A DNA stretch of 64,000 nucleotides from Macrostomum hystrix (lineage: Eukaryota; Animalia; Platyhelminthes): positions 7,502,001 through 7,566,000 of the forward strand of contig CATNEN010000034.1 in assembly GCA_950097015.1 (NCBI GenBank), given 5' to 3'. Shown in pieces: positions 14,327 to 64,000 of the stretch (positions within the stretch are counted from its first letter, which is position 1; each line of letters opens with the position of its first letter). The position numbers and the translations under genes are program-made. The notes under the pieces are model-generated. The model worked only from the letters and a program-made list of their open reading frames with translations, did not search any database and was not told the DNA's origin.

Positions 14327-14620
14327 ACGAAAAGCAAAACACTTTCCACTTGTTTTTTTAAAATGATTTCCTTCTAAGAAAAATTTTTGTATCTGATAGC
14401 GGTTTCAAATTTCTGTTTAAAATATGTATCCAACTGGAAGCAAAGGCACATGCACAGAGATACTCCCGAGGAGAAAATCACGTTAAAATTTCCTTATTGA
14501 TTGCAACGCAACCACAACGTTATCTGCATTCCTGAAGGTAAAACTATGGTTCCTGGGAAAGAAACAGTTTTCTCTGCTCGTCTGCGCTTAACGTTGAAAA
14601 TTCCAATCCAACAAAAGCTC

Positions 14621-14627
14621 TATATAA
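14621..14627 (+). promoter_or_regulatory. TATA box (TATATAA) with upstream CCAAT of the secreted-protein gene
   Basis: TTCCAAT-N-AAAAGCTCTATATAAGCTT lies ~78 nt upstream of the ATG. The same motif is at 16295, 23365, 30964, 50598 and 62331; it reads TATAGAA at 21496. Confidence 0.7.
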
Positions 14628-14698
14628 GCTTCTGAGAAATTCAAATCAAACTCCAATTTCTCGATTCGTTTATTGAAACTGCCAGAAATTGAATTGGA

Positions 14699-15235
14699 AT
14701 GCCCAATCAAAGCAGTTCTGTCATCCTACTGACGCTGGTCCTGCTGGCACTCTGCCTAGCACTGCCTCTTGCAGCTTCGAAACGCGCAGTCATCAGCCAA
14801 AGCTCGCTGGTTTCGCTGACCAATGTGCGAACTGGGAACCGCATGAATGTTAATCAAGAGTCATATAGTTGTTGGGCATGTGTAAATAGGTTTTTTTTGG
14901 ACGTCATAAAAGGTAAGCCAGCCTCATTCCGATTCGAAGACGCCTGGCATGGCTCTAAGAAGATCCTCCTCGTTGATTCTGGTGATAATAAGAGCTACGC
15001 ACAATGCGGCAACGCGGACACAGTCTTCCTTAGAAAAGGAGACGATGATCGTGGTCAGATGTGGTTCATTGTGAATCAGAACAACTCTATGAACATCAAA
15101 GATAGCGACATTGTGACCATCATAAATATGTACTGGACTAACGCCTACATTGTTGACAAATCGCCACACCGATCATCTCGTATTGCCTGCGAAAATGATA
15201 ATAAAGATAAATGGAAGGTCACTGCAATCAATTAG
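14699..15235 (+). CDS. Secreted beta-trefoil-like protein, type A copy 1 (178 aa)
   Basis: Signal peptide MPNQSSSVILLTLVLLALCLALPLAAS. Three ~45-50-aa pseudo-repeats ending FRF, QMWFI and KWKV. Conserved Cys in AQCGN and IAC. Intronless, with an upstream TATA. The fold is inferred. Confidence 0.85.
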   Translation: MPNQSSSVILLTLVLLALCLALPLAASKRAVISQSSLVSLTNVRTGNRMNVNQESYSCWACVNRFFLDVIKGKPASFRFEDAWHGSKKILLVDSGDNKSYAQCGNADTVFLRKGDDDRGQMWFIVNQNNSMNIKDSDIVTIINMYWTNAYIVDKSPHRSSRIACENDNKDKWKVTAIN

Positions 15236-15496
15236 TGAGACCTGGAACTCTTAGAAATAGACTGCTCTCGCCAGTTGTTCGAATCGTGGTCCAGAATATC
15301 TTTCTTTTAGCTGAAATATCTTTTGTTTTTCTTCGCACGACTAAAATTAAAAAAACGCAAGACATAATTTTTTACTGCTAAATTGCAACAATAATGTCGG
15401 ATTATAGGAATAATTAATAGATCGCAAGCTTTGGCTCTGGCCCTCAACTGTTGGTTTGTCAGCGAACAAGACTTGACTTGAGTTCTCCAGCTTACA

Positions 15497-15946
15497 AGTC
15501 CCAAACTGGGAGGATTGATTCCCAATCTGCCAGGGTTAAATCCCAAACTGGATAGACTTGACTCCCAGACTAGGAGGATTTGAATTTCAAACTAGGAGGA
15601 TTTGAATTTCAAACTAGGAGGATTTGAATTTCAAACTAGGAGGATTGGATTCCAAACTGAGAGGATTGAATTGTAAACTGGGAGGATTGGATTCCAAACT
15701 GAGAGGATTGAATTGTAAACTGGGAGGATTGAATCCCAAACTGGGAGTATTCGAATCCTAAACTGGGAGTATTCGAATCCCAAACTGGGAGTATTCGAAT
15801 CCCAAACTGGGAGTATTCGAATCTTAAACTGGGAGTATTCGAATCTTAAACTGGGAGTATTCGAATCCTAAACTGGGAGTATTCGAATCCCAAACTGGGA
15901 GTAATCAAATCCCAAACTGGGAGTATTCGAATCCCAAACTGGGAGT
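15497..15946 (+). repeat. 21-bp minisatellite array S1
   Basis: Units AATCCCAAACTGGGAGGATTG and AATCCCAAACTGGGAGTATTCG. Confidence 0.95.
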
Positions 15947-16372
15947 ATCACTTGCAGGCAACGCTTGAAGCACAGCGATTGCGAAGTGAAGCACTGAACG
16001 AAAAGCAAGAAAAGTTTCTCACTTGTTTTTTTTCAAGAATTTCTTTCTAAGAAATATGTTTGTATCTGATAGCGGTTTCAAATTTTAGTTGAAAATCTGT
16101 ATCCGACTTAAAGCAAAGGCATATGCACAGAGATACTCCTGAGGAGTGAACCAGATTAAAATTTTCCTTATTGATTGCAACGCAACCACAACGTCATCTG
16201 CATTCCTGAAGGTAAAAATATAGTTCCTAGGAATGAAAATGTTTTCTCTGCTCGTCTGCGCTTAACGTTGAAAATTCCAATCAACCAAAAGCTCTATATA
16301 AGCTTCTGAGAAATTCGAATCAAACTATAATTTCTCGATTCGTTTATTGAAACTGCCAGATATTGAATTGGA

Positions 16373-16906
16373 ATGCCCAATCAAAGCAGTTCTGTCATCC
16401 TACTGACGCTGGTCCTGCTGGCACTCTGCCTAGCACTGCCTCTTGCAGCTTCGAAACGCGCAGTCATCAGCCAAAGCTCGCTGGTTACGCTGATCAATGT
16501 GCGAACAGGGAACCGCATGAATGTTGGTTACAATGGTTGGTTATTTTTGGTCGCAACCGGTAAGGTCGCAACCGGTAAGCCAGCCTCATTCCGATTCGAA
16601 GACGCCTGGCATGGCTCTAAGAAGATCCTCCTCGACAATCCTGGTTATATTAAAGACATCTATGCACAATGCGGCAATGGCTATGCAATCTACCTTCAAA
16701 AAGGAGCCGCTGATCGTGGTCAGATGTGGTTCATTGTGAATCAGGACAACTCTATGAACATCAAAGATGGCGACATTGTGACCATCAGGAATATGTACTG
16801 GAGTCACGCCTACATTGTTGACACATCGCAGAAGGGATCATCTTTTAGCAGTATTGCCTGCCAGAATTATATTAAAGATAAATGGAAGGTCACTTTAATC
16901 AATTAG
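16373..16906 (+). CDS. Secreted beta-trefoil-like protein, type B copy 1 (177 aa)
   Basis: Same signal peptide and framework as 14699-15235 with different loops; TATA at 16295. Confidence 0.85.
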   Translation: MPNQSSSVILLTLVLLALCLALPLAASKRAVISQSSLVTLINVRTGNRMNVGYNGWLFLVATGKVATGKPASFRFEDAWHGSKKILLDNPGYIKDIYAQCGNGYAIYLQKGAADRGQMWFIVNQDNSMNIKDGDIVTIRNMYWSHAYIVDTSQKGSSFSSIACQNYIKDKWKVTLIN

Positions 16907-17484
16907 TGAGACCCGGAACTCTTACAAATTAACTGCTCTCGTCAGTTGTTCGAATCGTGGTACAAAATATCTTTATTCTAGCTGAAATCTCTTTTTATTT
17001 TCTTCGCACTGCGACAAACAAAGTAGAAACTGCAACAATGAAATCGGATTCAAAATCTGATTCGAAAATGAAGCGCGCACAATCGATACTATTGCTCAGT
17101 GTGAGTTGTTGGTGGTGTAGAAATTATGCGATGGGAAGTTCACGATTAAAATTTTATTGAAATTAATAAAATTAATCTTAAACACACATTGACATTTCGT
17201 ACATGTGTCCTTGGACATTTCTTCCGTCTCTCTTTGTACATTCACTGAATGTGTCCTTGGACATCCCCTCAGTGTGCTTTTGGATGTTTCCTCAGTGTCA
17301 TACCACATGGACTTAGCATAGGACGAGATCCATTTCGATTTCAATACAAATCTGTTAAAACTACTCGTGAGTTTAGCATTTGTGCAAAGTTGAGCCAATA
17401 AACAAATGAATTCTAACTTTCAGTCAACCAAGGACTGTAGTTATGAAAGTTCATTGTGAAGGCATGCCGTTTTTAAAGCAGGGA

Positions 17485-18597
17485 AAGCTGAGAGGATTGA
17501 ATCCCAAACTGGGAGGCTTGAATCCCAAACTGGGAGGGTTGAATCCCAAGCTGGGAGTATTGGATTCCAAGCTGTGAGGGTTGAATCCCAAACTGGTAGG
17601 ATTTAATCCCAAATTGGGAGGATTTAATCCCAAATTGGGAGTATTGGATTCCAAGCTGAGAGAATTGAATCCCAAACTGGGAGGACTGGATTCCAAGCTG
17701 AGAGAATTGAATCCCAAACTGGGAGGATTGGATTCCAAGCTGAGAGAACTGAATCCCAAATTGGGAGGATTGGATTCCAAGCTGAGAGGATTAAATCCCA
17801 AACTGGGAGGACTGGATTCCAAGCTGAGAGGATTAAATCCCAAACTGGGAGGATTGGATTCCAAGCTGAGAGGATTAAATCCCAAACTGGGAGGATTGGA
17901 TTCCAAGCTGAGAGGATTAAATCCCAAACTGGGAGGATTGGATTCCAAGCTGAGAGGATTGAATCCCAAACTGGGAGGATTGGATTCCAAGCTGAGAGGA
18001 TTAAATCGCAAACTGGGAGGACTGGATTCCAAGCTGAGAGGATTAAATCCCAAACTGGGAGGATTGAATTCCAAACTGGGAGGATTGAATCACCAAAAAC
18101 TGGAAGGTTGAATCCCAATATGGGAGGATTGAATCCCAAGCTGGGGGGATTGAATCCCAAACTGGGAGGGTTGAATCCCAAACTGGGAGGATTTGACTCC
18201 AAGCTGAGAGAATTGAATCCCAAACTCAAAGGATTGAATTCCAAACTGGGAGGATTGAATTCCAAACTGGGAGGATTGAATTCCACATTGGGAGGATTGA
18301 ATCCCAAACTGGGAGGATTTGACTCCAAGCTGAGAGAATTGAATCCCAAACTCGAAGGATTGAATTCCAAACTGGGAGGATTGAATTCCAAACTGGGAGG
18401 ATTGAATTCCAAATTGGGAGGATTGAATCCCAAACTGGGAGGATTGATTTCCAAACTGGGAGGATTGAATTCCAAACTGGGAGGATTGAATCCCAAACTG
18501 GGAGGATTTGACTCCAAGCTGAGAGAATTGAATCCCAAACTCGAAGGATTGAATTCCAAACTGGGAGGATTGAATTCCAAACTGGGAGGATTGAATC
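17485..18597 (+). repeat. 21-bp minisatellite array S2 with 42-bp dimeric higher-order units
   Basis: Alternating ...AATCCCAAACTGGGAGGATTG / GATTCCAAGCTGAGAGGATT... units. Confidence 0.95.
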
Positions 18598-18656
18598 TGA
18601 TGTTTGAAGCTGATTAATAATATCTTGCTGCATTGCCTAGCCCCCAATGTAGCCTG

Positions 18657-18901
18657 TGTGGTGACGTGACTCTGCTTGCGACTGGCTAAGGCAGGTGTGT
18701 TGCGCACCTGCCCGGCATGTTGTCTAATTATTTTTAATGTACTGTGTATGTGCGTGCTTTGAATATTTTTCTTTTTTGTGCACGCGCGGAGTCAGTAGCT
18801 CCACCCCTAATACTGCTATCGATTTGATGAATATAAAAGTCGCTGTTTCATCTCGTTGAGAGGTTGAGATTCGTTCTACAATCTTAAGCCAGGTCTCTAC
18901 A
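18657..18901 (+). mobile_element. Solo LTR, 245 bp
   Basis: TGTGG...CTACA termini and 5-bp target duplication GCCTG (18652-18656 / 18902-18906). The paralogous site at 11990-11994 is empty, with a single GCCTG. Confidence 0.85.
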
Positions 18902-19121
18902 GCCTGGATCTATATTGAACTTCTGCTTACAGAGCTCTCGCAGAAATTTACTTTTCTGCTGAAAAGAGGAGTCTCGAGGATAATTATTTTTAAAGAAAGA
19001 TTCGACAATTTTTTGCAGGGTTTGCTTTAGGCGTTTTTTATGAAAAAAAATTATAGGTTGGTCACCCTTAAGTGACGTGTAAAGTATGAGGCTAGCATGA
19101 GACGCAGATTCTGTTCTGTTT

Positions 19122-20547
19122 TCACATCCGGAGTATTGTAAATCCTGCTTTATGCAGCTTCATGATGGCTTTAACGATTTCTGATTTGCTGAATGATTCA
19201 TCAACTGATTCACAACTACCCATTCCGATTCTGACTCTTTTTCTCTAGCGATTTTCTCCATCTCTCGTTGATGTGCTCTGTCATTGCCGGCCTTCACAGC
19301 TGATGCAACTCCGCCGGCTACACCTCCTGCAGCACCAAGAGCGCCTGCGATGATGGGGATAAGAGTTAGCAAAGGAAGAATCCTGCCTGTCTTCTCATCA
19401 GTGATATTGTGTGTTTGATTGCTACAATAGATTAGATACTGTATGTACATCAAGACTAAAGTATGGGTCTGTTGCTCTTCTCTTTGCGTCCTTCTCCAGC
19501 TCTTCGGGTAAGTAAAGGAAGCGAACGAATTCAGAGTTAGTAAGAACTTCCGGAGAATAAACGCCAGGGGGCTTTGGATAGTGAGGGATAGGGATCTGAG
19601 TCATCTGACGTTTTGATTCAACTGTGTCTTGTTTGATGGCAGTATTTGGTTTCAGGTTTGTCATTCGAGATACTTCATTGTTCAGTTGACTTATTACTGC
19701 GGGAGTCTTTCTGTCCACTTGGTACAGTATTGGCCAATTTTTAGTTTCAGCTCTTCAGCTGTCTGCTTTGTAAACAGTAAGGGATTTGACTGCACCCATG
19801 AATTCTTTGCCAGGATCAGTCATAAAGGTTTGGGGGTGTGTGAGCGGTGAGTTTTTGTAAATATCTTGGAGGGCAGCTGCAACTGCTTCTGACCTCATAG
19901 TCTTAAGCGGTCTCGCTTCTTTATATCTGGAGGCAATGTCTATAACTGTGAGAGCATACTTGTAGCCTGAGTCATTGGGGAGAAACAGAAGATCTGCTTG
20001 GTGCGCTTCATTTAGCTTATATATGTTAAAGTGTGGTCTTGTAAATTTAACAGGTGGGAAATAGACTTGGTAAACTGCTTGCTTAGAGAGCCATCTTTTT
20101 CAACTGTTTGTTTTGATTCATTACTTAGTTCCGTTAGTTTGGTGACTGCATTTTTCCTACAAAGAATCCTCTGTCGCTGTAGTAGAGCTTTTGGAGTTTC
20201 TGATCTGTCATTATTTTTTTTAAATTTTTTTATTAAAATGGTGCAACGCTCTGGAGGTAACTTAGACTCACATGGGCTGGTAGAAAAGCTTCCTCATCCA
20301 AGCAAAGGCTGGACAATTCCCGGCTACAGATATTGCGGTCCTTTAAATCCGCTTGGGGACTTCAAGCGGGTGGAGGGAATCGATCGCTCGGAAGCTAGTT
20401 AAAGCTGTTATTTTTGGTAAGACAAAGTTGGGGTTGGGGCTTGGCGGCTGTTTGGGGGAAGGAAGCGGAATTGGCTTTATATTGCATGCTCCAGGTAAAC
20501 AACAAGGAGTTCTGCTGAAAGAACTGGGGGTTGAGAGAGCAGAATGA
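19122..20547. mobile_element. Second copy of the Polinton relic (pX-like, integrase 19422-20211 on minus, PLA2 20238-20547 on plus)
   Basis: Near-identical to 12222-13672 at an offset of ~6875 bp. Confidence 0.88.
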
Positions 20548-21030
20548 TTAAAGAAAATTCAGCTCATTTCGCCCGCGCACGTTCTTCGTCACGCATGATA
20601 CTCCACTGTTGCGGCTGCTGATTTCATCATGTTGCAAGTTTACTCATTTTTTCCTGACAATCCTGTGGTTAAAGACACAATACGCGCACGAATACCTAGT
20701 AAGTATAAATATAAGTATAAATAATTGGCTTTATATCTGTAACACACTAAAAGTGGGGAACGAACCTCGCGCTGGCAGACCGAGACGGGTTTCTGGCTTG
20801 TTTGCCTTCGTCAGTCAGCCATAGCCACACGCCGTCCTCTCCCACCACTATCAGTGTGCACAGAAGTCTCTTTTAACCTTGCCATTTTCTATGGCGATAT
20901 TTTTTTAGTGTTATGTGAGAATTTTGCAGCCAAGTCCTTCCTTTTCTACTGTTGTCAGTAGTCTGAATTGTATCTCTCACACTATCAACCCTGGAAGAAC
21001 TCTGCCCTACACGAATTTGCTGTACACGAA

Positions 21031-21201
21031 ATGAGCACGAGGAAAGTGCTTGCTTGCTTGATTGTAATTGTTTTCTCTATTCTGAACGCCAGTCAATCTC
21101 ATGCAAAAATTTCGACAGCCGACCTTTCACGCCACCAGTGCTTCTCTGTAATCACTTGCAGGCAACGCTCGAAGCACAGCAATTGCGAAGTGAAGCACTG
21201 A
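21031..21201 (+). CDS. Candidate 56-aa secreted peptide, copy 2
   Basis: Same protein as 14156-14326. Confidence 0.35.
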   Translation: MSTRKVLACLIVIVFSILNASQSHAKISTADLSRHQCFSVITCRQRSKHSNCEVKH

Positions 21202-21573
21202 ACGTAAAGCAAAACACTTTCCGCTTGTTTTTTTTTAATGATTTCCTTCTAAGAAAAATTTTTGTATCTGATAGCGGTTTCAAATTTTTGTTTAAAATCT
21301 GTATCCAACTGGAACCAAAGCCACATGCACAGAGATACTCCCGAGGAGAAAATCACGTTAAAATTTCCTTATTGATTGCAACGCAACCACAACGTTATCT
21401 GCATACCTGAAGGTAAAACTATGGTTCCTGGGAAAGAAACAGTTTTCTCTGCTCGTCTGCGCTTAACGTTGAAAATTCCAATCCAACAAAAACTCTATAG
21501 AAGCTTCTGAGAAATTCGAATCAAACTCCAATTTCTCGATTCGTTTATTGACACTGCCAGAAATTGAATTGGA

Positions 21574-22110
21574 ATGCCCAATCAAAGCAGTTCTGTCATC
21601 CTACTGACGCTGGTCCTGCTGGCACTCTGCCTAGCACTGCCTCTTGCAGCTTCGAAACGCGCAGTCATCAGCCAAAGCTCGCTGGTTTCGCTGACCAATG
21701 TGCGAACTGGGAACCGCATGAATGTTAATCAAGAGTCATATAGTTGTTGGGAATGTGTAAATAGGTTTTTTTTGGACGTCATAAAAGGTAAGCCAGCCTC
21801 ATTCCGATTCGAAGACGCCTGGCATGGCTCTAAGAAGATCCTCCTCGTTGATTCTGGTGATAATAAGAGCTACGCACAATGCGGCAACGCGGACACAGTC
21901 TTCCTTAGAAAAGGAGACGCTGATCGTGGTCAGATGTGGTTCATTGTGAATCAGAACAACTCTATGAACATCAAAGATGGCGACATTGTGACCATCAGGA
22001 ATATGTACTGGACTAACGCCTACATTGTTGACAAATCGCCACACCGATCATCTCGTATTGCCTGCGAAAATGATAATAAAGATAAATGGAAGGTCACTGC
22101 AATCAATTAG
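21574..22110 (+). CDS. Secreted beta-trefoil-like protein, type A copy 2 (178 aa)
   Basis: Four amino-acid differences from 14699-15235. Confidence 0.85.
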   Translation: MPNQSSSVILLTLVLLALCLALPLAASKRAVISQSSLVSLTNVRTGNRMNVNQESYSCWECVNRFFLDVIKGKPASFRFEDAWHGSKKILLVDSGDNKSYAQCGNADTVFLRKGDADRGQMWFIVNQNNSMNIKDGDIVTIRNMYWTNAYIVDKSPHRSSRIACENDNKDKWKVTAIN

Positions 22111-22372
22111 TGAGACCTGGAACTCTTAGAAATAGACTGCTCTCGCCAGTTGTTCGAATCGTGGTCCAGAATATCTTTCTTTTAGCTGAAATCTCTTTTG
22201 TTTTTCTTCGCACGACTAAAATAAAAAAAACGCAAGACATAATTTTTTACTGCTAAATTGCTACAATAATATCGGATTATAGGAATAGTAAATAGATCGA
22301 AAGCTTTGGCTCTGGCCCTCAACTGTTGGTTTGTCAGCTACCAAGACTTGACTTGAGTTCTCCAGCTTACAA

Positions 22373-23017
22373 GTCCCAAACTGGGAGGATTGATTCCCAA
22401 TCTGCCAGGGTTAAATCCCAAACTGGATAGACTTGACTCCCAGACTAGGAGGATTTGAATTTCAAACTAGGAGGATTTGACTCCCAAACTAGGAGGATTT
22501 GAATTTCAAACTAGGAGGATTTGAATTTCAAACTAGGAGGATTTGAATTTCAAACTAGGAGGATTTGAATTTCAAACTAGGAGGATTTGAATTTCAAACT
22601 AGGAGGATTTGAATTTCAAACTAGGAGGATTTGAATTTCAAACTAGGAGGATTGGATTCCAAACTGAGAGGATTGAATTGTAAACTGGGAGGATTGGATT
22701 CCAAACTGAGAGGATTGAATTGTAAACTGGGAGGATTGGATTCCAAACTGAGAGGATTGAATTGATAACTGGGAGGATTGAATCCCAAACTGGGAGTATT
22801 CGAATCCTAAACTGGGAGTATTCGAATCCTAAACTGGGAGTATTCGAATCCCAAACTGGGAGTATTCGAATCTTAAACTGGGAGTATTCGAATCTTAAAC
22901 TGGGAGTATTCGAATCCTAAACTGGGAGTATTCGAATCCCAAACTGGGAGTAATCAAATCCCAAACTGGGAGTATTCGAATCCCAAACTGGGAGTATTCG
23001 AATCCCAAACTGGGAGT
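22373..23017 (+). repeat. 21-bp minisatellite array S3
   Basis: Paralogue of S1, about 200 bp longer. Confidence 0.95.
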
Positions 23018-23442
23018 ATCACTTGCAGGCAACGCTCGAAGCACAGCGATTGCGAAGTGAAGCACTGAACGAAAAGCAAGAAAAGTTTCTCACTTGTTTT
23101 TTTCAAGAATTACTTTCTAAGAAATATTTCTGTATCTGATAGCGGTTTCAAATTTTAGTTGAAAATATGTATCCGGCTTGAAGCAAAGGCATATGCACAG
23201 AGATACTCCTGAGGAGTGAACCAGATTAAAATTTTCCTTATTGATTGCAACGCAACCACAACGTCATCTGCATTCCTGAAGGTAAAAATGTAGTTCCTAG
23301 GAAAGAAACAGTTTTCTCTGCTCGTCTGCGCTTAACGTTAAAAATTCCAATCAACCAAAAGCTCTATATAAGCTTCTGAGAAATTCAAATCAAACTCCAA
23401 TTTCTCGGTTTGTTTATTGAAACTGCCAGAAATTGAATTGGA

Positions 23443-23976: not shown

Positions 23977-24554
23977 TGAGACCCGGAACTCTTACAAATT
24001 AACTGCTCTCGTCAGTTGTTCGAATCGTGGTACAAAATATCTTTATTCTAGCTGAAATCTCTTTTTATTTTCTTCGCACTGCGACAAACAAAGTAGAAAC
24101 TGCAACAATGAAATCGGATTCAAAATCTGATTCGAAAATGAAGCGCGGACGATAGATACTACTGCTCAGTGTCAGTTGTTGGTGGTGTAGAAATTATGCG
24201 ATGGGAAGTTCACGATTACAATTTTATTGAAATTAATAAAATCAATCTTAAACACACATTGACATTTCGTACATGTGTCCTTGGACATTTCTTCCGTCTC
24301 TCTTTGTACATTCACTAAATGTGTCCTTGGACATCCCCTCAGTGTGCTTTTGGATGTTTCCTCAGTGTCATACCACATGGACTTAGCATAGGACAAGATC
24401 CATTTCGATTTCAATACAAATCTGTTCAAACTACTCGTGAGTTTAGCATTTGTGCAAAGTTGAGCCAATAAACAAATGAATTCTAACTTTCAGTCAACCA
24501 AGGACTGTAGTTATAAAAGTTCATTGTGAAGGCATGCCGTTTTTAAAGCAAGGA

Positions 24555-55300: not shown

Positions 55301-57058
55301 GACAGCCAGGGCAAAACCGCTGCCCAGCACTGCCTTCTCGAGAGTCTCCACGATGCAGTGGAGGGCGCTTTCCGTGGACCGGCCCGCCCGAAAGGCGTGC
55401 TGGTTTGGGGAGAGCGGGGCCCGCCCTAGCTCTACAGTAAGAAGGCGCCAGAGCACCAGTCTTTCCATGAGCTTGAGGCAGGTGGAAGTCAAGCTTATCG
55501 GGCGATAGGACTTGACCGAGCGATAGTCGCCTTTGGCGGGCTTCGGGATGAAGACGACCCGGGCTTCGTGCCACAGCGCTGGTACATAGTCCAGCACGAT
55601 GCAGGCCCGTAGAAGTCTGCAGAGGAGATGGAGAAAGCGGCCATTTTTGACCGCTTCATGCAAAAAGGCCGGATAAATACCATCTGGCCCAGGTGCTTTG
55701 AAAGGGTTGAATGACTTTGCCGCGCGAACGATGCGGTCATTCGTGACGAGTGACTGAGCCAGGCCTCCTCCACGTGAGTGGTCGTCTGGGCCAAAGTGCG
55801 CCGGTACACTCGGGAAGAAATGCCCTAGCATAAGCTCGAGCGTTTCCTCCGGGCGCTCCGTGATCGAGCCGTCTGGCTTTTTGATCGATGAGAGCTTGGA
55901 GAAGCGGTCGTTGGTGAGCGCCTTTACCACGCGGGCCGTGGGCCGCGAGCCCTCAAGCCCTTCGCAGTATTGTCGCCACTTGTCCGCTTTTGCCCTTCTG
56001 ACCCGGCCCTTAAACTCATGGATGGCGCGAGTATAGGCCTCTTTGTCATCAGGGTCGTGCGAGATTTTCAGCCTCCTCTGGAGAGCCTTTGCTCGGCGTC
56101 TCAGGACTCCGAGCTCGGGGTTCCACCAGGGGGCCGATTTTTTGCCTTTGTAGGCTTTGAGCGGGCAAGCCATTTCGTAGGCCCCTGTGATGGCGCCGCC
56201 CAGCAGGGCAGCCACTCCATCTAGGTCCTGCGTGGTTGCCATGGCCATGGAGGGGTCGGAATCCCGAAGGCCCTCATGCAGCTTTTGGCTGAACACGGGC
56301 CAGTCGGTATTTCTGACATTACGCCTCCAAATAGGCTTTTGCTTCTTATCGGGGGTACCGATGTTGAAGCGAATGAAGCGGTGGTCCGAGAGCGAGCTTT
56401 CGGTCTCCCACACCTCCCACCCCAGCACCCTTGGGAGGATGCCGGGTGAGGCCAGAGTGACGTCAAGCACCTCAGCCCACCGCCCATTGTCGAACGTGGG
56501 CGTGTTGCCCACATTGCAGAAGTTAAGAGGCATGCCGCTAACGAAGGCCAGGAGCTCTTCGCCGCGGTCATTGATTTTTGAGCTACCCCAGATGGGTCAT
56601 CCAGCGCTGTTGCCCATTCTGTCCGGCTGCCCTAGGGTCAGCCTTGAACACTCGCGGGACGTGTACCCATGGGTCAGCTGACGGGACAGCGCGGAGGGAT
56701 TCCTGTACCCGAAGGCACAGGTCTCCTTCCTGCCCGGCCTGCTCAAGAAACGACTGCAGGTGTGAGGCATCGCAGGCCATAGCCCGTGGGCCTGGACTGA
56801 CTCATACCTCACAGGCACTGTGTCCCGCCGGTGCGAGCAGGGGGGAGCCATTTGGCGGCCGCTCTCTCCAGCGCCCTGCGTGGTGCTAGGGCGGCCACCT
56901 CAACTTTGACTAGCACTTGCGCTGAGCCGGGCCAGTGTGCATAGGGCTTAAGCTCATGTACACGCGCCGGCCTATAAATCACTAACTTTTGGAGCGCGCT
57001 GCGCTTAACCTGTTTCTCCGCCAAATAAAATAAACATTACGTGGCTGCAATCGCCACA
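52388..57058 (+). mobile_element. CsRn1-like LTR retrotransposon copy 2 with both LTRs (52388-52592, 56851-57058); RNase H and integrase deleted
   Basis: 4-bp target duplication AAGT (52384-52387 / 57059-57062). gag 52627-53331 is nearly identical to copy 1. pol breaks at 54517. Confidence 0.92.
54524..56838 (-). mobile_element. Non-LTR retrotransposon copy 2 (APE C-terminus plus RT; 5'-truncated, 3' part deleted)
   Basis: NVGNTPTF...VLDVTL...LSDHRFI (APE end), then the same RT as copy 1. Confidence 0.9.
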
Positions 57059-57064: not shown

Positions 57065-58535
57065 TATTTGGGAGTATTTGAATTCGAAACTGGGAGTATT
57101 TGAATCCCAATCTGGTAGAATGGAATCCCAAACTGCAAGTATTTTAATCCCAAAATGGGAGAATTTGAGTCCCGAACTGGGAGTATTCAAATATCCAAAC
57201 TGGGAGAATTCAAATCCCGAACTGGGAGTATTCAAATCCCAAACTGGTAGGTTTGAATCCCTAACTAGGAGTATTTGAATCCCAAACTGGGAGTATTTGA
57301 ATACCAAACTGGGAGGATTGAATCCGAAACTGGAGTATTTGAATCAGAAACTGGGAGGATTTAATCCCAAACTGGGAGTATTTGAATCCCAACTTGGAAG
57401 GATCAAATCCCAAATTGGGAGGATTGAATCCCAAATTGGTAGGATTGAATCACGAATTATAGAGAAATAAATTCCAAACTGGGAGGATTGAATTCCAAAC
57501 TGGGAGGATTGAATCACGAATTATAGAGAAATAAATTCCAAACTGGGAGGATTGAATTCCAAACTGGGAGGATTGAATTCCAAACTGGGAGGATTGAATT
57601 CCAAACTGGGAGGATTGAATTCCAAACTGGGAGGATTGAATTCCAAACTGGGAGGATTGAATTCCAAACTGGGAGGATTGAATCCCAAACTGGTAGGTTT
57701 GAATCCCTAACTAGGAGTATTTGAATCCCAAACTGGGAGTATTTGAATACCAAACTGGGAGGATTGAATCCGAAACTGGAGTATTTGAATCAGAAACTGG
57801 GAGGATTTAATCCCAAACTGGGAGTATTTGAATCCCAAATTGGAAGGATCAAATCCCAAATTGGGAGGATTGAATCCCAAATTGGTAGGATTGAATCACG
57901 AATTATAGAGAAATAAATTCCAAACTGGGAGGATTGAATTCCAAACTGGGAGGATTGAATCACGAATTATAGAGAAATAAATTCCAAACTGGGAGGATTG
58001 AATTCCAAACTGGGAGGATTGAATTCCAAACTGGGAGGATTGAATTCCAAACTGGGAGGATTGAATTCCAAACTGGGAGGATTGAATTCCAAACTGGGAG
58101 GATTGAATTCCAAACTGGGAGGATTGAATTCCAAACTGGGAGGATTGAATCACGAATTATAGAGAAATAAATTCCAAACTGGGAGGATTGAATTCCAAAC
58201 TGGGAGGATTGAATTCCAAACTGGGAGGATTGAATTCCAAACTGGGAGGATTGAATTCCAAACTGGGAGGATTGGATTCCAAACTGGAAGGATCGAATCC
58301 CAAATTGGGAGGATTCAATCCCAAATCGTGAGGATTGAATCCCAAACTGGGAGTATTCAAATCCCAAACTGGGAGTATTCAAATCCCAAACTGGGAGTAT
58401 TCAAATCCCAAACTGGGAGTATTCAAATCCCAAACTGGGAGTATTCAAATCCCAAACTGGGAGTATTCAAATCCCAAACTGGGAGTATTCAAATCCCAAA
58501 CTGGGAGTATTCAATTCCTAAACTGGTAGTATTGA
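57065..58535 (+). repeat. 21-bp minisatellite array S9 (continuation of S8 after the LTR insertion)
   Basis: Contains a ~446-bp internal duplication (57245 vs 57691) and recurrent AATCACGAATTATAGAGAAATAA variant units. Confidence 0.95.
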
Positions 58536-58604
58536 ATCTGATGTTTGAAGCTGATTAATAATATCTTGCTATATTAATAATATAATAGCCCCCGAGGTAG
58601 CCTG

Positions 58605-59499: not shown

Positions 59500-59785
59500 G
59501 AGTTTGGGATTCAATCTTCCAAGTTTGGGATTCAATCCTCCGAGATTGGGATTCAATCTTCCAAGTTTGGGATTCAATCCTCCCAGCTTGAAATTCAATC
59601 CTCTTAGCTTGGAATCCAATTCTCCCACTTTGGGATTGGAAATCAATAGAGCTGAAAATCAGTTTAGAATTCAATCCTCCCAGTTTGGGGTTCAATCCTC
59701 CCAGTTTGGGATTCAACCCTCCCAGTTTGGGATTCAATCCTCCCAGTTTGGGATTCAACCTCCCCGCTCGGGATTCAATCCTCTC
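59500..59785 (-). repeat. 21-bp minisatellite array S10 (inverted)
   Basis: Paralogue of S6. Confidence 0.93.
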
Positions 59786-60101
59786 AGCTTTCCTTGCTTT
59801 AAAAACGGCATGCCTTCACAATGAACTTTCATAACTACAGTCCTTGGTTGACTGAAAGTAAGAATTCATTTGTTTACTTTACTCAACTTTGCACAAATGC
59901 TAAACTCACGAGTAGTTTTAACAGATTTGTATTAAAATCGAAATGGATCTCTTCCTATGCTAAGTCCATGTTGGACTTAGTTGGACTATGCTAAGTCCAT
60001 GATATTATTGTTGCAATTTCTACTTTGTTTGTCGCAGTGCGAAGAAAATAAAAAGATATTTCAGCTAATAGAAAGATAGTCTGTACCACGATTCGAACAA
60101 C

Positions 60102-60636
60102 TCACGAATTGATTACAGTGACCTTCCATTCATCTTTAGTATCATTCTTGCAGGCAATACTGCTAAGAGATTATCATTGCGGGGATGTGTCAACAATGTA
60201 GGCGTGACTCCAGTACATATTCCTGATGGTCACAATGTCGCCATCTTTGATGTTCAAAGAGTTGTTCTGATTCACAATGAACCACATCTGACCACGATCA
60301 GCGTCTCCTTTTCGAAGGTAGATTGTATAGCCGTTGCCGCATTGTGCATAGATCTCTTCATTATAACCAGGATTGTCGAGGACGATCTTCTTAGAGCCAT
60401 GCCAGGCGTCTTCGAATCGGAATGAGGTTGGCTTACTGGTTGCGACCTTCAAAAATAACCTTCTTTGACATAACCAACGATTGGATGACTCTTGATTAAC
60501 ATTTATGCGGTTGCCTGTTCGCACATTGATCAGCGTAACCAGCGAGCTTTGGCTGATGACTGCGCGTTTCGAAGCTGCAAGAGGCAGTGCTAGGCAGAGT
60601 GCCAGCAGGACCAGCGTCAGTAGGATGACAGAACAT
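60102..60636 (-). pseudogene. Secreted beta-trefoil-like pseudogene, type D copy 2 (inverted)
   Basis: Same promoter/start deletion and premature TGA-TAA as 41661-42197. Confidence 0.85.
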
Positions 60637-61354
60637 TTTCTTTCCTAGGAACTACATTTTTACCTTCAGGAATGCAGATGACGTGGTTGCGTTGCAATCA
60701 AAAAGGAAAACTTTAACGTGATTTACTCATCAGGAGTATCTCTGTGCATGTGGCTTTGCTTCAAGTTGGATACATATTTTCAACTAAAATTTGAAACCGC
60801 TATCAGATCCAGAAAAATATTTCTTAGAAGGAAATTACTGAAAAAAAACATGTGGGAAAATTTTTTTCTTTTCGTTCCGTGCTTCGCTTCGCAATTGCTG
60901 AGCTTCCAGCGTTGCCTGCAAGTGATCACAGAGAAGCACTGGTGGCGTGATTTTCCGCTGTCAAGATTAGGCATGAGATTGACTGCGGTTCAGCATTAGA
61001 TTGCAGCAGGGGATTGGCTCAGTTTGGCATTCAATCAACCCAGTCTGATATTGACATCCTCCCAGTGTGTGTTGGTTTTGCGTTTGCACTTTTATGCTTC
61101 AGTCCTCGTTTACATTCTGTGTTATCTTTCTCCCTATCTGTCGTGCGCTGTCTCTCTCTAGCAGTGTTTACTCACCGCATATCCACCTGCGTGTCAGTGC
61201 ATGTTTTAGCCCTCAACCAATCAAATCGTTTCAATAATCAATGTGCATTCATCGTAAAGTCTGTGCATAATAAATAGATCGAAAGCTTTGGCTCTGGCCC
61301 TCAACTGTTGGTTTGTCAGCTACCAAGACTTGACTTGAGTTCTCCAGCTTACAA

Positions 61355-61966
61355 GTCCCAAACTGGGAGGATTGATTCCCAATCTGCCAGGGTTAAATCC
61401 CAAACTGGATAGACTTGACTCCCAAACTAGGAGGATTTGAATTTCAAACTAGGAGGATTGGATTCCAAGCTGAGAGAATTGAATTCCAAACAATGAGGAT
61501 TGGATTCCAAGCTGGGAGGATTAGATTCCAAGCTGGGAGGATTAGATTCCAAGCTGGGAGGATTAGATTCCAAGCTGGGAGGATTGGATTCCAAGCTAGG
61601 AGGATTAGAATCCAAGCTGGGAGGATTGGATTCAAAACTGGGAGGATTGAATCCCAATCTGGGAGGATTAGATTCCAAGCTGGGAGGATTAGATTCCAAG
61701 CTGGGAGGATTAGATTCCAAGCTGGGAGGATTAGATTCCAAGCTGGGAGGATTAGATTCCAAGCTGGGAAGATTGGATTCCAAGCTGGGAGGATTAGATT
61801 CCAAGCTGGGAGGATTGAATCCCAAACTGGGAGTATTCGAATCCCAAACTGGGAGTATTCGAATCCCAAACTGGGAGTATTCGAATCCCAAACTGGGAGT
61901 ATTCGAATCCCAAACTGGGAGTATTCGAATCCCAAACTGGGAGTATTCGAATCCCAAACTGGGAGT
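61355..61966 (+). repeat. 21-bp minisatellite array S11
   Basis: Paralogue of S7. Confidence 0.95.
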
Positions 61967-62408
61967 ATCAATTGCAGGTAACGCTCGAAGCACAGCGATT
62001 GCGAAGTGAAGCACTGAACGAAAAGCAAGAAAAGTTTCTCACTTGTTTTTTTCAAGAATTTCCTTCTAAGAAATATTTTTTCTATAGCGGTTTCAAATTT
62101 TAGTTGAAAATATGTTCACAATTGTATAAAATATGTATCCGACTTGAAGCAAAGGCATATGCACAGAGATACTCCTGAGGAGTGAACCAGATTAAAATTT
62201 TCCTCATTGATTGCAACGCAACCACAACGTCATCTGCATTCCTGAAGGTTAAAATGTAGTTCCTAGGAAAGAAACAGTTTTCTCTGCTCGTCTGCGCTTA
62301 ACGTTAAAAATTCCAATTAACCAAAAGCTCTATATAAGCTTGTGAGAATTTCAAATCAAACTCCAATTTCTCGGTTCGTTTATTGAAACTGCCAGAAATT
62401 GAATTGGA

Positions 62409-62957
62409 ATGCCCAATCAAAGCAGTTCTGTCATCCTACTGACGCTGGTCCTGCTGGCACTCTGCCTAGCACTGCCTCTTGCAGCTTCGAAACGCGCAGT
62501 CATCAGCCAAAGCTCGCTGGTTACGCTGATCAATGTGGGAACAGGGAACCGCATGGAAGTTCGTCAAGACAATGGTTGGTTATTTTTGGACGCAACCGGT
62601 AATGTCGCAACCGGTAAGCCAACCTCATTCCGATTCAAAGACGCCTGGCATGGCTCTAAGAAGATCGTCCTCGAGAATTATGGTTATATTGAAGAGATCT
62701 ATGCACAATGCGGCAACGACTATACAATCTACCTTCAAAAAGGAGCCTCTGATCGTGGTCAGATGTGGTTCATTGTGAATCAGAACAACTCTATGAACAT
62801 CAAAGATGGCGACATTGTGACCATCAGGAATATGTACTGGAGTCACGTCTACCTTGTTGACTTATGGCCGAAGGGATCATCTCTTAGCAGTATTGCCTGC
62901 AAGAAGCATATTAAAGATGATAAAAAAGATAGGTGGAAGGTGACTTTAATTAATTAG
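62409..62957 (+). CDS. Secreted beta-trefoil-like protein (182 aa)
   Basis: Same framework; TATA at 62331. Confidence 0.85.
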   Translation: MPNQSSSVILLTLVLLALCLALPLAASKRAVISQSSLVTLINVGTGNRMEVRQDNGWLFLDATGNVATGKPTSFRFKDAWHGSKKIVLENYGYIEEIYAQCGNDYTIYLQKGASDRGQMWFIVNQNNSMNIKDGDIVTIRNMYWSHVYLVDLWPKGSSLSSIACKKHIKDDKKDRWKVTLIN

Positions 62958-63566
62958 TGAGACCTGGAACTCTTACAAATATACTGCTCTCGTCAGTTGT
63001 TCGAATCGTGGTACAAAATATCTTTCTTTTAGCTTTTTATTCTATTTTCTTCGCACGACTAAAATTTATAAAAGGCAAGAATCAATTATTAACTGCGAAA
63101 AACGAAGTAAAATTGCAACAATGATATCGGAATCAAAATCAGATTCGAAAATGAAGCGCGCACAATCGATACTACTGCTCAGTGTGAGTTGTTGGTGGTG
63201 TAGAAATTATGCGATGGGAAGTTCACGATTACAATTTTATTGAAATTGAAAAAATCAATTTTAAACACACATTGACATTTTTTACATGTGTCCTTGGACA
63301 TTTCTTCCGTCTCTCTTTGTACATTCACTGAATGTGTCCTTGGACATCCCCTCAGTGTGCTTTTGGATGTTTCCCCAGTGTCATACCACATGGACTTAGC
63401 ATAGGACAAGATCCATTTCGATTTCAATACAAATCTGGTCAAACTACTCGTGAGTTTAGCATTTGTGCAAAGTTGAGCCAATAAACAAATGCATTCTAAC
63501 TTTCAGTCAACCAAGGACTGTAGTTATGAAAGTTCATTGTGAAGGCATGCCGTTTTTAAAGCAAGG

Positions 63567-64000
63567 AAAGCTGAGAGGATTGAATCCCAAACTTGGAGGT
63601 TGAATCCCAAACTGGGAGGTTGAATTCCAAACTGGGAGGGTTGAATCCAAAGCTGGGAGGTTTGAATCCCAAACTGGGAGGATTGGATTCAAAGCTGTGA
63701 GGATTGAATCCCAAACTGGGAGGTTGAATCCCAAACTGGGAGGATTGGATTCAAAGCTGTGAGGATTGAATCCCAAACTGGGAGGTTGAATCCAAAAATG
63801 GGAGGATTGAATCCAAAAATGGGAGGATTGAATCCCAAACTGGGAGGATTGAATCCCTAACTGCGAGGATTGAATCCCAAACTAGGAGGGTTGAATCCCA
63901 AACTAGGAGGGTTGAATCCCTAACTGGGAGGATTGGATTCTAAGCTAGGAGGATTGGATTACAAATGGGGAGGATTGAATCCCAAATTCAGAGGATTGAA
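63567..64000 (+). repeat. 21-bp minisatellite array S12 (runs off the window)
   Basis: Read directly. Confidence 0.95.

What the first reader, a model, noticed from the sequence alone, without database searches (positions are those of the whole stretch)
14400..64000. Minisatellite-bounded cassettes amplifying a family of hypervariable secreted proteins (candidate new effector or recognition system)
Seen: nine copies of an intronless ~180-aa gene (14699, 16373, 21574, 23443, 31042, 41661, 50676, 60102, 62409). Each has a conserved ~350-bp upstream block, and each is followed by a 21-bp minisatellite array; most are also preceded by one. Known: the sea-urchin SpTransformer (Sp185/333) immune genes are similarly bracketed by short tandem repeats that delimit segmental duplications. 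Inference: this is an analogous repeat-driven diversification locus for a secreted lectin-, toxin- or immune-type protein that I cannot assign to a named family.
Basis: partly seen in the sequence, partly recalled or inferred. Interest (0 to 1): 0.88.

Follow-up and report, generated by a model that had tools for sequence, protein, structure and literature searches.

The report
Satellite-flanked lysenin-like secreted gene family
A flatworm-like animal genome carries about twenty fast-evolving copies of a small secreted protein related to the membrane-binding end of the earthworm toxin lysenin, and every copy sits beside a short tandem repeat found nowhere else in the genome.

Summary
The window has nine copies of an intronless 177-188-aa signal-peptide ORF. 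Seven are intact on the + strand; two on the - strand are frameshifted pseudogenes. All nine are followed by a 21/22-bp minisatellite array, and five are also preceded by one.

The protein can now be named. [quoted passage not shown] It lacks the pore-forming module, and lysenin's phosphocholine pocket is not conserved.

Genome-wide there are about 20 copies in three loci. Every satellite match whose position was returned (235 of 301) falls inside those loci, in the gene's orientation. In the two loci outside the window, and in five of the nine window copies, an array lies upstream of the start codon; where it abuts the conserved block it ends 419-486 bp from the ATG.

The TATA promoter and signal peptide stay nearly identical. 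The mature domain shows excess amino-acid change (omega about 1.8, p 0.003), concentrated in loops. Paralogues are recombination mosaics, and one switch point lies inside an array. RNA-library contigs cover only the ORF and short flanking stretches.

The satellite's causal role and the ligand remain inferred. The youngest 6.9-kb duplication has edges outside the arrays. I rate this a new variant of a known kind.

The parts
14699..15235 (+). Intact family gene, type A, 178 aa: signal peptide plus beta-trefoil
   Evidence: ORF; member of alignment A1
15499..15948 (+). 22-bp minisatellite array (unit TCCCAAACTGGGAGKATTCGAA). It lies downstream of gene 14699 and abuts the upstream block of gene 16373.
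15951..16372 (+). Conserved upstream (promoter) block of about 420 bp, with a CTATATAAGC TATA box about 75 bp before the ATG. It starts at the array edge.
   Evidence: the same block in copy 14699 was read
16373..16906 (+). Intact family gene, type B, 177 aa
16907..17484 (+). Conserved downstream block. It contains 3-4 copies of a 23-bp motif (17191-17298) and ends at the fixed junction ...AAAGCAAGGAAAG|CTGAGAGGATTGAATCC.
17485..18597 (+). 21-bp minisatellite array (42-bp higher order), about 52 units
21574..22110 (+). Intact family gene, type A; recent duplicate of 14699
22374..23016 (+). 22-bp minisatellite array
23443..23976 (+). Intact family gene, type B; recent duplicate of 16373
24555..25163 (+). 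21-bp minisatellite array
11989..25466 (+). Two units of a recent tandem duplication of about 6.9 kb (11989-18900 and 18901-25466, 96-98% identical), each with a type A and a type B gene. A partial third unit spans 25467-26603. The unit edges lie about 300 bp outside the 21-bp array.
31042..31590 (+). Intact family gene, 182 aa. This is the copy that was folded and laid against sequencing runs. RNA-library contigs cover 31010-31690 only.
32206..32746 (+). 21-bp array. A recombination switch point lies inside it at about 32640: identity to the 50676 locus rises from 86-97% to 99-100%.
32751..40165 (.). LTR (gypsy-type) retroelement with a nested non-LTR element, inserted directly after the array. 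Its right end was not mapped precisely.
   Evidence: ORFs; similarity to 52381-56260
40980..41346 (-). 21-bp array in reverse orientation, downstream of the minus-strand pseudogene
41661..42197 (-). Family pseudogene: out of frame from just after the start codon, with internal stops
42922..43849 (+). 21-bp array, GGATTAGATT variant, between the pseudogene and the split upstream block of gene 50676
44023..50353 (+). LTR-type retroelement (gag, protease, RT, integrase ORFs) inserted into the upstream block of gene 50676
   Evidence: ORFs; upstream block resumes at 50354
50676..51242 (+). Intact family gene, 188 aa, with a 10-residue insertion in a variable loop
51858..52376 (+). 21-bp array; left part of an array split by an LTR element
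52381..57058 (.). LTR element (LTRs near 52381-52592 and 56853-57058) with a nested non-LTR element. It is 99-99.6% identical to 32751-39672.
57069..58538 (+). 21-bp array; right part of the split array
59501..59787 (-). 21-bp array in reverse orientation, downstream of the minus-strand pseudogene
60102..60636 (-). Family pseudogene, 98.5% duplicate of 41661-42197, with the same frame disruption and more stops
61358..61965 (+). 21/22-bp array between head-to-head copies 60102 (-) and 62409 (+)
62409..62957 (+). Intact family gene, 182 aa
63571..64000 (+). 21-bp array that continues about 1.5 kb beyond the window end

Best explanation
This is a lineage-restricted multigene family encoding small secreted single-domain beta-trefoil proteins. 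The domain is homologous to the C-terminal, membrane/phosphocholine-binding domain of the earthworm pore-forming toxin lysenin. It has no pore-forming module and carries a cleavable signal peptide instead.

Each gene is a compact intronless cassette: a TATA promoter block of about 0.42 kb, a 0.55-kb ORF, and 0.2-0.6 kb of 3' flank. The cassette is embedded among arrays of a family-specific 21/22-bp minisatellite that point the same way as the gene.

The ancestral cassette already carried the satellite. It has since been amplified to about 20 copies in three loci.

Proposed mechanism (inferred):
- The co-oriented arrays, together with the near-identical promoter and signal-peptide segments, give long tracts of homology.
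- Unequal crossing-over and gene conversion across those tracts add, delete and recombine cassettes.
- Selection then favours amino-acid change in the exposed loops of the trefoil, while the promoter, the signal peptide and the fold core stay fixed.

The products most likely act as a co-expressed repertoire of secreted binding modules (lectin-like or lipid-headgroup-like) with diversified specificities. Their role would be recognition or defence at the body surface or in secretions.
For: **Fold and homology**
- AlphaFold model: 12 strands, mean pLDDT 79, pTM 0.74.
- Foldseek's top 16 PDB hits are all lysenin, E 4e-8 to 3e-7, with 19-22% identity.
- VIA-align gives Z 18.2-18.4; the 3zx7 alignment covers residues 156-297 at rmsd 2.6 over 140 residues.
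- The family profile against all PDB sequences hits only lysenin, E 2.4e-7.
- One of only two hits in 1.84 billion representative proteins is a full-length lysenin homologue.
- The same genome has its own full-length lysenin-like ORF on C11, E 1e-22.

**Secretion.** The hydrophobic N-terminus is invariant.

**Architecture and exclusivity.** The upstream junction and promoter are conserved across paralogues that share only 49-64% of amino acids.

**Selection**
- Over seven independent pairs the mature domain has 186.5 nonsynonymous and 27.5 synonymous differences, omega 1.77, p 0.003.
- Within-cluster pairs give omega about 1.0-5 where it could be computed, by NG86, LWL85 and YN00 (YN00 failed on half the pairs).
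- The signal-peptide nucleotides diverge 0-2.5%, against 2-14% for the upstream block.
- Variable sites cluster in loops at 50-72, 87-97, 104-106, 113-116, 152-161 and 165-175.

**Recombination**
- An identity switch lies inside an array.
- Copies 81381 and 90248 are a mosaic, p 1e-6.
- The pseudogene cassette was duplicated with arrays of changed length.

**Transcription.** Contigs from one RNA run and two probable RNA runs cover only 31010-31690. One 269-bp contig has a single mismatch. The DNA run covers every bin.
Against: - The youngest duplication (6.9 kb) has its edges outside the arrays. Satellites are therefore not required for duplication.
- One switch point inside an array is a single case.
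- This genome is rich in satellites generally. Even the unrelated lysenin-like gene on C11 has a different 14-bp array beside it.
- Hairpin propensity of the arrays is weak and inconsistent, z -1 to -6.
- Recombination among paralogues violates the independence assumed in the omega test. The counts use simple pairwise methods.
- Two of the three RNA runs are only guessed to be RNA, and contigs cannot give levels, strand or tissue.
- No ligand, tissue or induction data exist.
- Lysenin's phosphocholine-pocket residues are not kept, so function cannot be transferred from lysenin.
Confidence: 0.6

Rival explanations
1. The satellite is a passive passenger. It was part of the first cassette and has simply been copied along with the gene by ordinary segmental duplication. 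Concerted evolution keeps the arrays recognisable. It neither drives the amplification nor regulates the genes.
For: - The fixed junctions at both array edges are inherited, not re-created.
- The most recent 6.9-kb duplication breaks outside the arrays.
- The genome is generally satellite-rich.
- Synonymous divergence between loci is only about 0.3, so inheritance alone can explain the shared satellite.
Against: - The identity switch from about 86-97% to 99-100% falls inside an array.
- Array lengths differ between otherwise 98.5% identical duplicates.
- Array orientation always follows the adjacent gene.
Confidence: 0.3
2. The genomic architecture is the same, but the proteins are reproductive or other glandular secretions, such as seminal-fluid or adhesive-gland proteins. 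Their fast evolution would then come from sexual conflict rather than from pathogen or prey recognition.
For: - Small secreted, lineage-specific, tandemly duplicated proteins with omega above 1 fit reproductive proteins as well.
- The shared, strongly conserved promoter suggests one dedicated cell type.
- Other agents' notes call the genome a Macrostomum-like hermaphroditic flatworm (not verified here).
Against: - There are no tissue data either way.
- The only detectable homologue is the targeting domain of a defence toxin.
- The cluster lies next to a URGCP/very-large-GTPase-type gene, which is weak circumstantial evidence for an immune neighbourhood.
Confidence: 0.25
3. The cassette plus satellite is the cargo or body of a mobile element (Helitron-like, foldback-like or similar) that spread the gene to three loci.
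For: - Copies lie in three loci on two contigs.
- Other notes report Helitrons and foldback elements tied to satellites in this genome, and a TIR-bounded 19.9-kb element inside this very cluster (not tested here).
Against: - I noticed no transposase or Rep/helicase ORF and no terminal signature at the cassette edges, though I made no dedicated search.
- The satellite is confined to three loci instead of being scattered.
- The TE-like ORFs I looked at in the cluster belong to LTR and LINE elements inserted into the arrays or cassettes.
Confidence: 0.07
4. The family is decaying. Omega near or above 1 would simply reflect relaxed constraint in redundant copies on their way to becoming pseudogenes.
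For: - Two of the nine window copies, and several fragments elsewhere, are broken.
- Omega between loci is 0.75-0.95.
Against: - Fifteen full ORFs remain open.
- About 55 positions, including the fold core, the two cysteines and the signal peptide, are invariant across paralogues with 49-64% identity.
- The excess of nonsynonymous change is significant, and change is confined to loops.
- Transcripts of several paralogues appear in RNA libraries.
Confidence: 0.05

Closest known systems
Lysenin and lysenin-related proteins of the earthworm Eisenia fetida (PDB 3ZX7, 3ZXD, 3ZXG, 5EC5, 5GAQ)
   Same: - The whole mature protein aligns with lysenin's C-terminal beta-trefoil (residues about 156-297).
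- Shared motifs include Q-x-W, GD-x-VT-x-x-N-x-Y/W and C-x(4-9)-D-K/R-W.
- The genome also has a full-length lysenin-like gene.
   Different: - There is no aerolysin-type pore-forming module, so no pore formation is expected.
- It has a signal peptide, which lysenin lacks (from my own knowledge, not tested here).
- Of the four alignable phosphocholine-pocket residues reported in PMC3526787, only Tyr233 is kept, as Tyr or Phe. Ser227 becomes Gly, the gate Gln229 falls on a hypervariable position, and Tyr282 becomes Ala.
- It is massively duplicated.
SpTransformer (Sp185/333) gene clusters of the purple sea urchin
   Same: The resemblance is of architecture and proposed working (from my own knowledge, not checked in a paper here). 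Both have tight clusters of small secreted-protein genes, each flanked by short tandem repeats; repeat-associated segmental duplications; mosaic paralogues with presence/absence blocks; and high amino-acid diversity.
   Different: - There is no sequence relationship. The family profile found only two weak hits in 1.84 billion proteins, neither of that family.
- The repeats here are 21/22-bp minisatellite arrays of 0.2-3.6 kb, not di- or trinucleotide microsatellites.
- The genes have one exon, not two.
- The protein is a folded beta-trefoil, not a disordered protein.
- Immune induction is unknown.
Ricin-B / R-type beta-trefoil lectins (Pfam PF00652, PF14200) and other secreted trefoil families such as mosquito CWRC salivary proteins
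   Same: - Same fold: Z 16-17 to HA33, fungal lectins and designed trefoils.
- Language-model neighbours are RicinB_lectin_2 clusters.
- A three-fold pseudo-repeat ends in D-A-W, Q-M-W and D-K/R-W.
   Different: - No Pfam model matches, even at E 10.
- Only one canonical QxW motif is present.
- Sugar binding is unknown.
Repeat-flanked cassette systems of antigenic variation, such as the 70-bp repeats upstream of trypanosome VSG genes
   Same: A family-specific tandem repeat lies at a fixed short distance upstream of many family genes (all seven mapped in the two other loci, five of nine in the window) and can serve as a recombination tract. Two of the three loci lie 0.2-0.34 Mb from the two ends of one 7.8-Mb contig.
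   Different: All the intact copies aligned carry the same complete TATA promoter, and several paralogues are seen in RNA libraries. There is therefore no sign of silent donor cassettes feeding one expression site. The comparison rests on my own knowledge of that system.

Membership tests
Lysenin family (aerolysin-type pore-forming toxin with C-terminal trefoil) | C-terminal beta-trefoil domain homologous to that of lysenin | tested here: met
   - Profile against PDB sequences: lysenin is the only hit, E 2.4e-7.
- Foldseek E 4e-8.
- Z 18.2, rmsd 2.6 over 140 residues.
Lysenin family (aerolysin-type pore-forming toxin with C-terminal trefoil) | N-terminal aerolysin-like pore-forming module | tested here: not met
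   - The ORF is 177-188 aa, signal peptide then trefoil.
- Structural and sequence alignments cover only lysenin 156-297.
- A separate full-length homologue exists at C11.
Lysenin family (aerolysin-type pore-forming toxin with C-terminal trefoil) | Phosphocholine pocket residues Lys185, Ser227, Gln229, Tyr233, Tyr282 (PMC3526787) | tested here: not met
   From the alignment, read against the residues quoted and the columns:
- Ser227 aligns with Gly102.
- Gln229 aligns with variable position 104.
- Tyr233 aligns with Tyr/Phe108.
- Tyr282 aligns with Ala163.
- Lys185 lies outside the alignment.
Ricin-B / R-type lectin domain (PF00652, PF14200) | Match to the Pfam models | tested here: not met
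   No ricin-type model matched at E up to 10 for five paralogues.
Ricin-B / R-type lectin domain (PF00652, PF14200) | Beta-trefoil fold with a three-fold (QxW) repeat | tested here: inconclusive
   The fold is met. Only Q118-M-W120 is a canonical QxW. The other two repeats have D-A-W and D-K/R-W.
Ricin-B / R-type lectin domain (PF00652, PF14200) | Carbohydrate binding | not testable with these tools
   This needs glycan or lipid arrays with recombinant protein.
SpTransformer-type repeat-bracketed immune gene cluster | Clustered small secreted-protein genes, each flanked by short tandem repeats | tested here: met
   The repeats here are 21/22-bp minisatellites.
SpTransformer-type repeat-bracketed immune gene cluster | Duplication units delimited by the repeats | tested here: inconclusive
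   Cassette homology ends at array edges, and one switch point lies inside an array. However, the youngest 6.9-kb duplication ends outside the arrays.
SpTransformer-type repeat-bracketed immune gene cluster | Sequence homology to Sp185/333 proteins | tested here: not met
   The profile search of 1.84 billion proteins returned only a Gram-positive surface protein and a lysenin homologue.
SpTransformer-type repeat-bracketed immune gene cluster | Expression induced by immune challenge | not testable with these tools
   Only presence in RNA-library contigs could be shown.
VSG-like cassette and expression-site system | Silent donor cassettes lacking promoters, copied into a dedicated expression site | tested here: not met
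   All eight aligned copies from the three loci keep the same TATA promoter block. Contigs of several paralogues occur in RNA libraries.

The most novel reading that the evidence does not exclude
The family-exclusive minisatellite may be a functional cis-element rather than a by-product. Sitting at a fixed distance upstream of the promoters, in the gene's orientation, it could be a dedicated recombination signal. Like switch regions or VSG 70-bp repeats, it would then target breaks and cassette exchange to this locus. Alternatively it could be a multi-site binding platform that sets variegated or one-of-many expression of the repertoire. Either way the animal would have an actively diversified recognition system built from a domain freed from a pore-forming toxin.
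Probability: 0.1. Interest if true: 0.85.

Novelty: new variant of a known kind. Interest (0 to 1): 0.6.

Why it matters
- **Toxin-domain evolution.** The targeting domain of an aerolysin-type pore-forming toxin has been released as an independent secreted protein. It has expanded into a repertoire of about 20 genes evolving under diversifying selection, in an animal group where I found no paper describing lysenin relatives.
- **Genome architecture.** The locus independently repeats the design described for sea-urchin Sp185/333: short secreted-protein genes separated by tandem repeats. Here the repeat is exclusive to the gene family. If the organism is a laboratory-tractable flatworm, as other notes suggest, repeat-mediated gene-family turnover could be tested directly.
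- **Possible tools.** Lysenin derivatives are used as lipid probes. A natural library of variants of the same scaffold with different loop sequences may offer new lipid- or glycan-binding specificities.

Tried and rejected
- **Pfam:** scan of five paralogues gave no family.
- **The search for homologous proteins, 31042 protein:** nothing. This search sees only proteins of 0.55-1.75 times the query length.
- **Exact look-up:** the family protein, the C11 lysenin-like ORF and the large GTPase are not in the 15-billion-protein collection.
- **Metagenome contigs:** no hit for the satellite dimer or for relatives of the family.
- **tRNA origin of the repeat:** the 22-bp unit contains GGATTCGAATCC, which resembles a tRNA T-arm or B-box. 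ARAGORN found no tRNA in the window, so the idea was dropped.
- **Hairpin-forming arrays:** DNA folding z-scores of -2.0, -6.0 and -0.95 are inconsistent. I do not use this as an argument.
- **Bacterial-type promoter/terminator scan:** uninformative for a eukaryote.
- **Profile against the C11 lysenin-like ORF:** hhalign gave only E 7e-4 and probability 27%. This is weak support, but the alignment does include the first trefoil strand.
- **Branch-wise substitution counts:** I did not attempt it any other way and used independent pairs instead.
- **First self-comparison:** it was swamped by satellite hits and redone with the arrays masked.
- **Literature:** searches for lysenin in Macrostomum or flatworms found nothing relevant.
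- **Not tested:** copy-number variation among individuals. The single reads call went to the expression question.

Full report
**1. The observation**

The ORF list shows intact ORFs of 177-188 aa on the + strand at 14699, 16373, 21574, 23443, 31042, 50676 and 62409. All begin MPNQSSSVILLTLVLLALCLALPLAAS. The copies at 41661 and 60102 are on the - strand. Translated from their start codon, they are out of frame almost at once and contain several stops. They are 98.5% identical to each other over 1.55 kb, so a pseudogene cassette was itself duplicated.

Tandem Repeats Finder and a fuzzy scan with the unit place 21-bp or 22-bp arrays 0.27-0.6 kb after every one of the nine genes. Five of the nine also have an array 0.42-0.75 kb before the start. 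The corrections are minor: two copies are pseudogenes on the other strand, the upstream block is about 420 bp, and the repeat has two period variants.

**2. Anatomy of a cassette**

After masking the arrays, self-comparison and inspection of the junctions give the unit: array, about 420 bp upstream block, ORF, 0.2-0.6 kb downstream block, array.

- In copies 16373, 23443 and 62409 the upstream block begins at the last base of a 22-bp array (...GGGAGTATCA|CTTGCAGGCAACGC).
- In seven copies the downstream block ends at one fixed junction (...AAAGCAAGGAAAG|CTGAGAGGATTGAATCC).
- The junctions are therefore inherited.
- The upstream block carries a CTATATAAGC TATA box about 75 bp before the ATG.
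- The array flanking each gene's 3' side always reads in that gene's orientation; the arrays between head-to-head pairs take the orientation of the + gene.

The cluster is also riddled with LTR and non-LTR retroelements inserted into arrays or cassettes: 32751-40165, 44023-50353 and 52381-57058.

**3. The family and the satellite in the whole genome**

The window is C34:7502001-7566000 of a 220-Mb, 42-contig assembly. The protein finds 25 matches, grouped as follows:

- about 17 at C34:7.51-7.60 Mb
- three at C34:0.31-0.34 Mb (about 63% identity)
- two at C8:1.13-1.16 Mb (49-58% identity)
- fragments at C34:7.75 Mb

Three satellite patterns were searched genome-wide:

| Pattern | Matches | Listed |
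|---|---|---|
| 21-bp dimer | 166 | all 86 with at most one mismatch, plus 14 of the two-mismatch matches; 66 unlisted |
| 22-bp variant | 88 | all |
| GGATTAGATT variant | 47 | all |

Reversed-pattern controls gave 0. Every listed match lies in those same three loci.

I fetched the rest of the main cluster and the two other loci and mapped them. All five genes of the two other loci have a co-oriented array ending 419 bp (C34 left locus) or 485-486 bp (C8) upstream of the ATG. In the main cluster the figure is 423-438 bp where an array abuts the upstream block; other copies have one only downstream or further upstream. An alignment of eight upstream regions shows that the proximal 250 bp, TATA box included, is better conserved than the mature coding sequence.

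Gene and satellite are thus one evolutionary unit that predates the split of the three loci (synonymous divergence about 0.3). Neither is met.

**4. What the protein is**

- Pfam finds nothing.
- The language-model atlas pointed to ricin-B-like trefoils.
- A model built on an alignment of 14 paralogues (A1) has 12 strands after an N-terminal helix, mean pLDDT 79 and pTM 0.74.
- Foldseek's first 16 PDB hits are all lysenin (E 4e-8 to 3e-7, 19-22% identity), ahead of generic trefoils.
- VIA-align gives Z 18.2-18.4 for lysenin. The cleanest alignment is model 27-182 onto lysenin 156-297, rmsd 2.6 over 140 residues.
- Independently of structure, the family profile searched against all PDB sequences hits only lysenin (E 2.4e-7, residues 193-297 of chain 5ec5_A), with shared Q-x-W, GD-x-VT-x-x-N and C...DKW motifs.
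- The profile search of 1.84 billion representative proteins returned only two weak hits. One is an unrelated Gram-positive surface protein. The other, P0002, is a full-length lysenin homologue (E 3e-30).
- Used as a query, P0002 finds the family again, plus a 316-aa ORF on C11. That ORF aligns with lysenin residues 81-294 (E 1e-22).

So the genome has one conventional lysenin-like gene and, separately, this expanded family. The family corresponds to the lysenin C-terminal domain alone, preceded by a signal peptide.

The paper that solved lysenin (PMC3526787) states that phosphocholine is bound in the trefoil by Tyr233, Ser227 and Tyr282, with a salt bridge to Lys185. Gln229 acts as a gate. 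In the alignment these positions correspond as follows:

| Lysenin residue | Family position |
|---|---|
| Tyr233 | Tyr/Phe108 |
| Ser227 | Gly102 |
| Tyr282 | Ala163 |
| Gln229 | hypervariable position 104 |
| Lys185 | not aligned |

The two invariant cysteines, Cys101 and Cys164, sit next to the Ser227 and Tyr282 equivalents. The pocket is therefore remodelled, and the ligand cannot be inferred from lysenin.

**5. How the family evolves**

Pairwise comparison of flanks and coding parts gave these nucleotide divergences:

| Region | Divergence |
|---|---|
| 81-nt signal-peptide segment | 0-2.5% |
| upstream block | 0.2-14% |
| mature coding part | 0-15% |

The mature part exceeds the upstream block in 33 of 45 pairs.

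Over seven phylogenetically independent pairs, the mature part has 186.5 nonsynonymous and 27.5 synonymous differences (omega 1.77, binomial p 0.003). The signal-peptide part has only four differences in all. Three estimators give omega 1.0-5 for within-cluster pairs and 0.74-0.94 between loci.

Variable columns and indels cluster at residues 50-72, 87-97, 104-106, 113-116, 145-147, 152-161 and 165-175. These are the hairpins and loops of all three trefoil lobes. The strands of the barrel are invariant.

Paralogues are also mosaics. Copies 81381 and 90248 (coordinates counted from the window start) are identical at 399 of 400 upstream bases. They differ at 13 coding positions, all amino-acid-changing. 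Ten of those fall in the last 80 aligned bases, next to a 12-bp indel, and there each copy matches a different set of paralogues (p 1e-6). This mosaicism qualifies the independence assumed in the omega test, but not the excess of nonsynonymous differences as such.

**6. Do the arrays take part in rearrangement?**

Evidence for:
- Aligning the 31042 locus with the 50676 locus gives 89-98% identity through promoter, gene and 3' flank, and 86-97% in the first part of the array.
- From about 32640/52270, inside the array, identity jumps to 99-100%. It stays there through the adjoining LTR element, which carries the same nested LINE in both places.
- A recent exchange therefore ended within the array.
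- Array lengths differ between otherwise 98.5% identical duplicates: 367 against 287 bp, and 928 against 608 bp.

Evidence against a necessary role:
- The youngest event is a 6.9-kb two-gene tandem duplication (11989-18900 and 18901-25466, 96-98%). Its edges lie about 300 bp beyond an array.
- The arrays show no consistent hairpin propensity.

I conclude that the arrays are demonstrably sites of exchange. I cannot show that they are the main driver.

**7. Expression**

Of the runs that share words with the 31042 cassette, I laid one RNA run (a sediment metatranscriptome), two runs guessed to be RNA, and one DNA run.

- The DNA run covers all 30 bins of 30400-32200.
- The three RNA-type runs cover only 31010-31690, with traces downstream in one. 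That span is the ORF with about 30 nt before it and 100 nt after.
- It starts 40-45 nt after the TATA box.
- One 269-bp contig has a single mismatch.
- Loose ends match other paralogues.

This supports transcription of several copies without introns. It gives no level, strand or tissue.

**8. Organism and context**

The coded run labels do not name the species. Notes from other agents on this genome call it a Macrostomum-like flatworm. I did not verify that. It does fit the sediment metatranscriptome hit and the retroelement and Polinton content.

Literature searches found no description of lysenin relatives in flatworms. One annelid genome paper states that lysenin was found only in Eisenia when compared with Enchytraeus.

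**9. Verdict**

It is a lineage-restricted family of about 20 stand-alone secreted lysenin-C-terminal-domain-like beta-trefoils. The family sits in three loci, locked to a family-exclusive minisatellite. Promoter and signal peptide are frozen, the loops are under diversifying selection, and paralogues recombine.

Two things are inferred and not shown: a causal role of the satellite in amplification, and a recognition or defence function.

It resembles the Sp185/333 architecture without any homology. It is related to lysenin but is not a pore-forming toxin. I rate it a new variant of a known kind, with interest 0.6.

Noticed in passing
window 3020-8536 (+): An intronless 1838-aa ORF has URGCP-like GTPase and URGCP domains (E 6e-100 and 8e-47). 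This is the very-large-inducible-GTPase type. It lies 6 kb upstream of the cluster.
   Followed up: partly
L026:988-1938 (G000:C11:6601481-6602431, +): A 316-aa ORF with a signal-peptide-like N-terminus aligns with lysenin residues 81-294 (E 1e-22). It is a probable full-length lysenin-type pore-forming protein in this genome. An unrelated 14-bp minisatellite (CTGTCTTCTACCCA, 39 copies) follows it 0.6 kb downstream.
   Followed up: partly
window 17191-17298, 24261-24368, 31906-32013, 63274-63359; also L020:2876-3146: Every downstream block of types B to E holds 3-4 degenerate copies of a 23-bp motif (TGTGTCCTTGGACATTCCCTCAG) containing the palindrome TGTCC-TT-GGACA. The motif is also kept at the gene fragment at C34:7.75 Mb, which has no satellite.
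   Followed up: no
window 13156-13527 and 20031-20402 (+); 12222-12578 (-); 11076-11408 (-): Short ORFs lie in the spacer of the 6.9-kb duplication. One matches the adenovirus protein X / mu core motif (PF05829, E 3e-6). Another contains a PGYRYCGPLNPLG stretch that recalls viral capsid N-termini. They are probably remnants of a Polinton-like or other endogenous viral element. I observed them only.
   Followed up: no
window 32751-39672 versus 52381-56260: Two copies of the same LTR element share the same nested non-LTR insertion and are 99-99.6% identical. The second is a deletion derivative, with its pol ORF cut at 54517. The LTRs of the second copy are 97.6% identical to each other.
   Followed up: partly
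window 27559-28106, 28174-28360, 30266-30357, 1938-2102, 2286-2444: Unrelated tandem repeats: a 25-bp satellite (22 copies), a 21-bp AT-rich repeat, (CTTG)23, and 15-bp and 17-bp arrays near the large GTPase gene.
   Followed up: no
G000:C34, loci at 0.30-0.34 Mb and 7.51-7.60 Mb of a 7.82-Mb contig: Two of the three family loci lie at similar distances (0.2-0.34 Mb) from the two opposite ends of the same contig. This may point to exchange between chromosome-end regions.
   Followed up: no
main cluster, about 98023-98655 counted from the window start (G000:C34:7600023-7600655, -): A more divergent family member (41% identity to the 31042 protein) lies in a 230-aa open frame at the far edge of the cluster. 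Only a 3-unit satellite remnant sits beside it.
   Followed up: no
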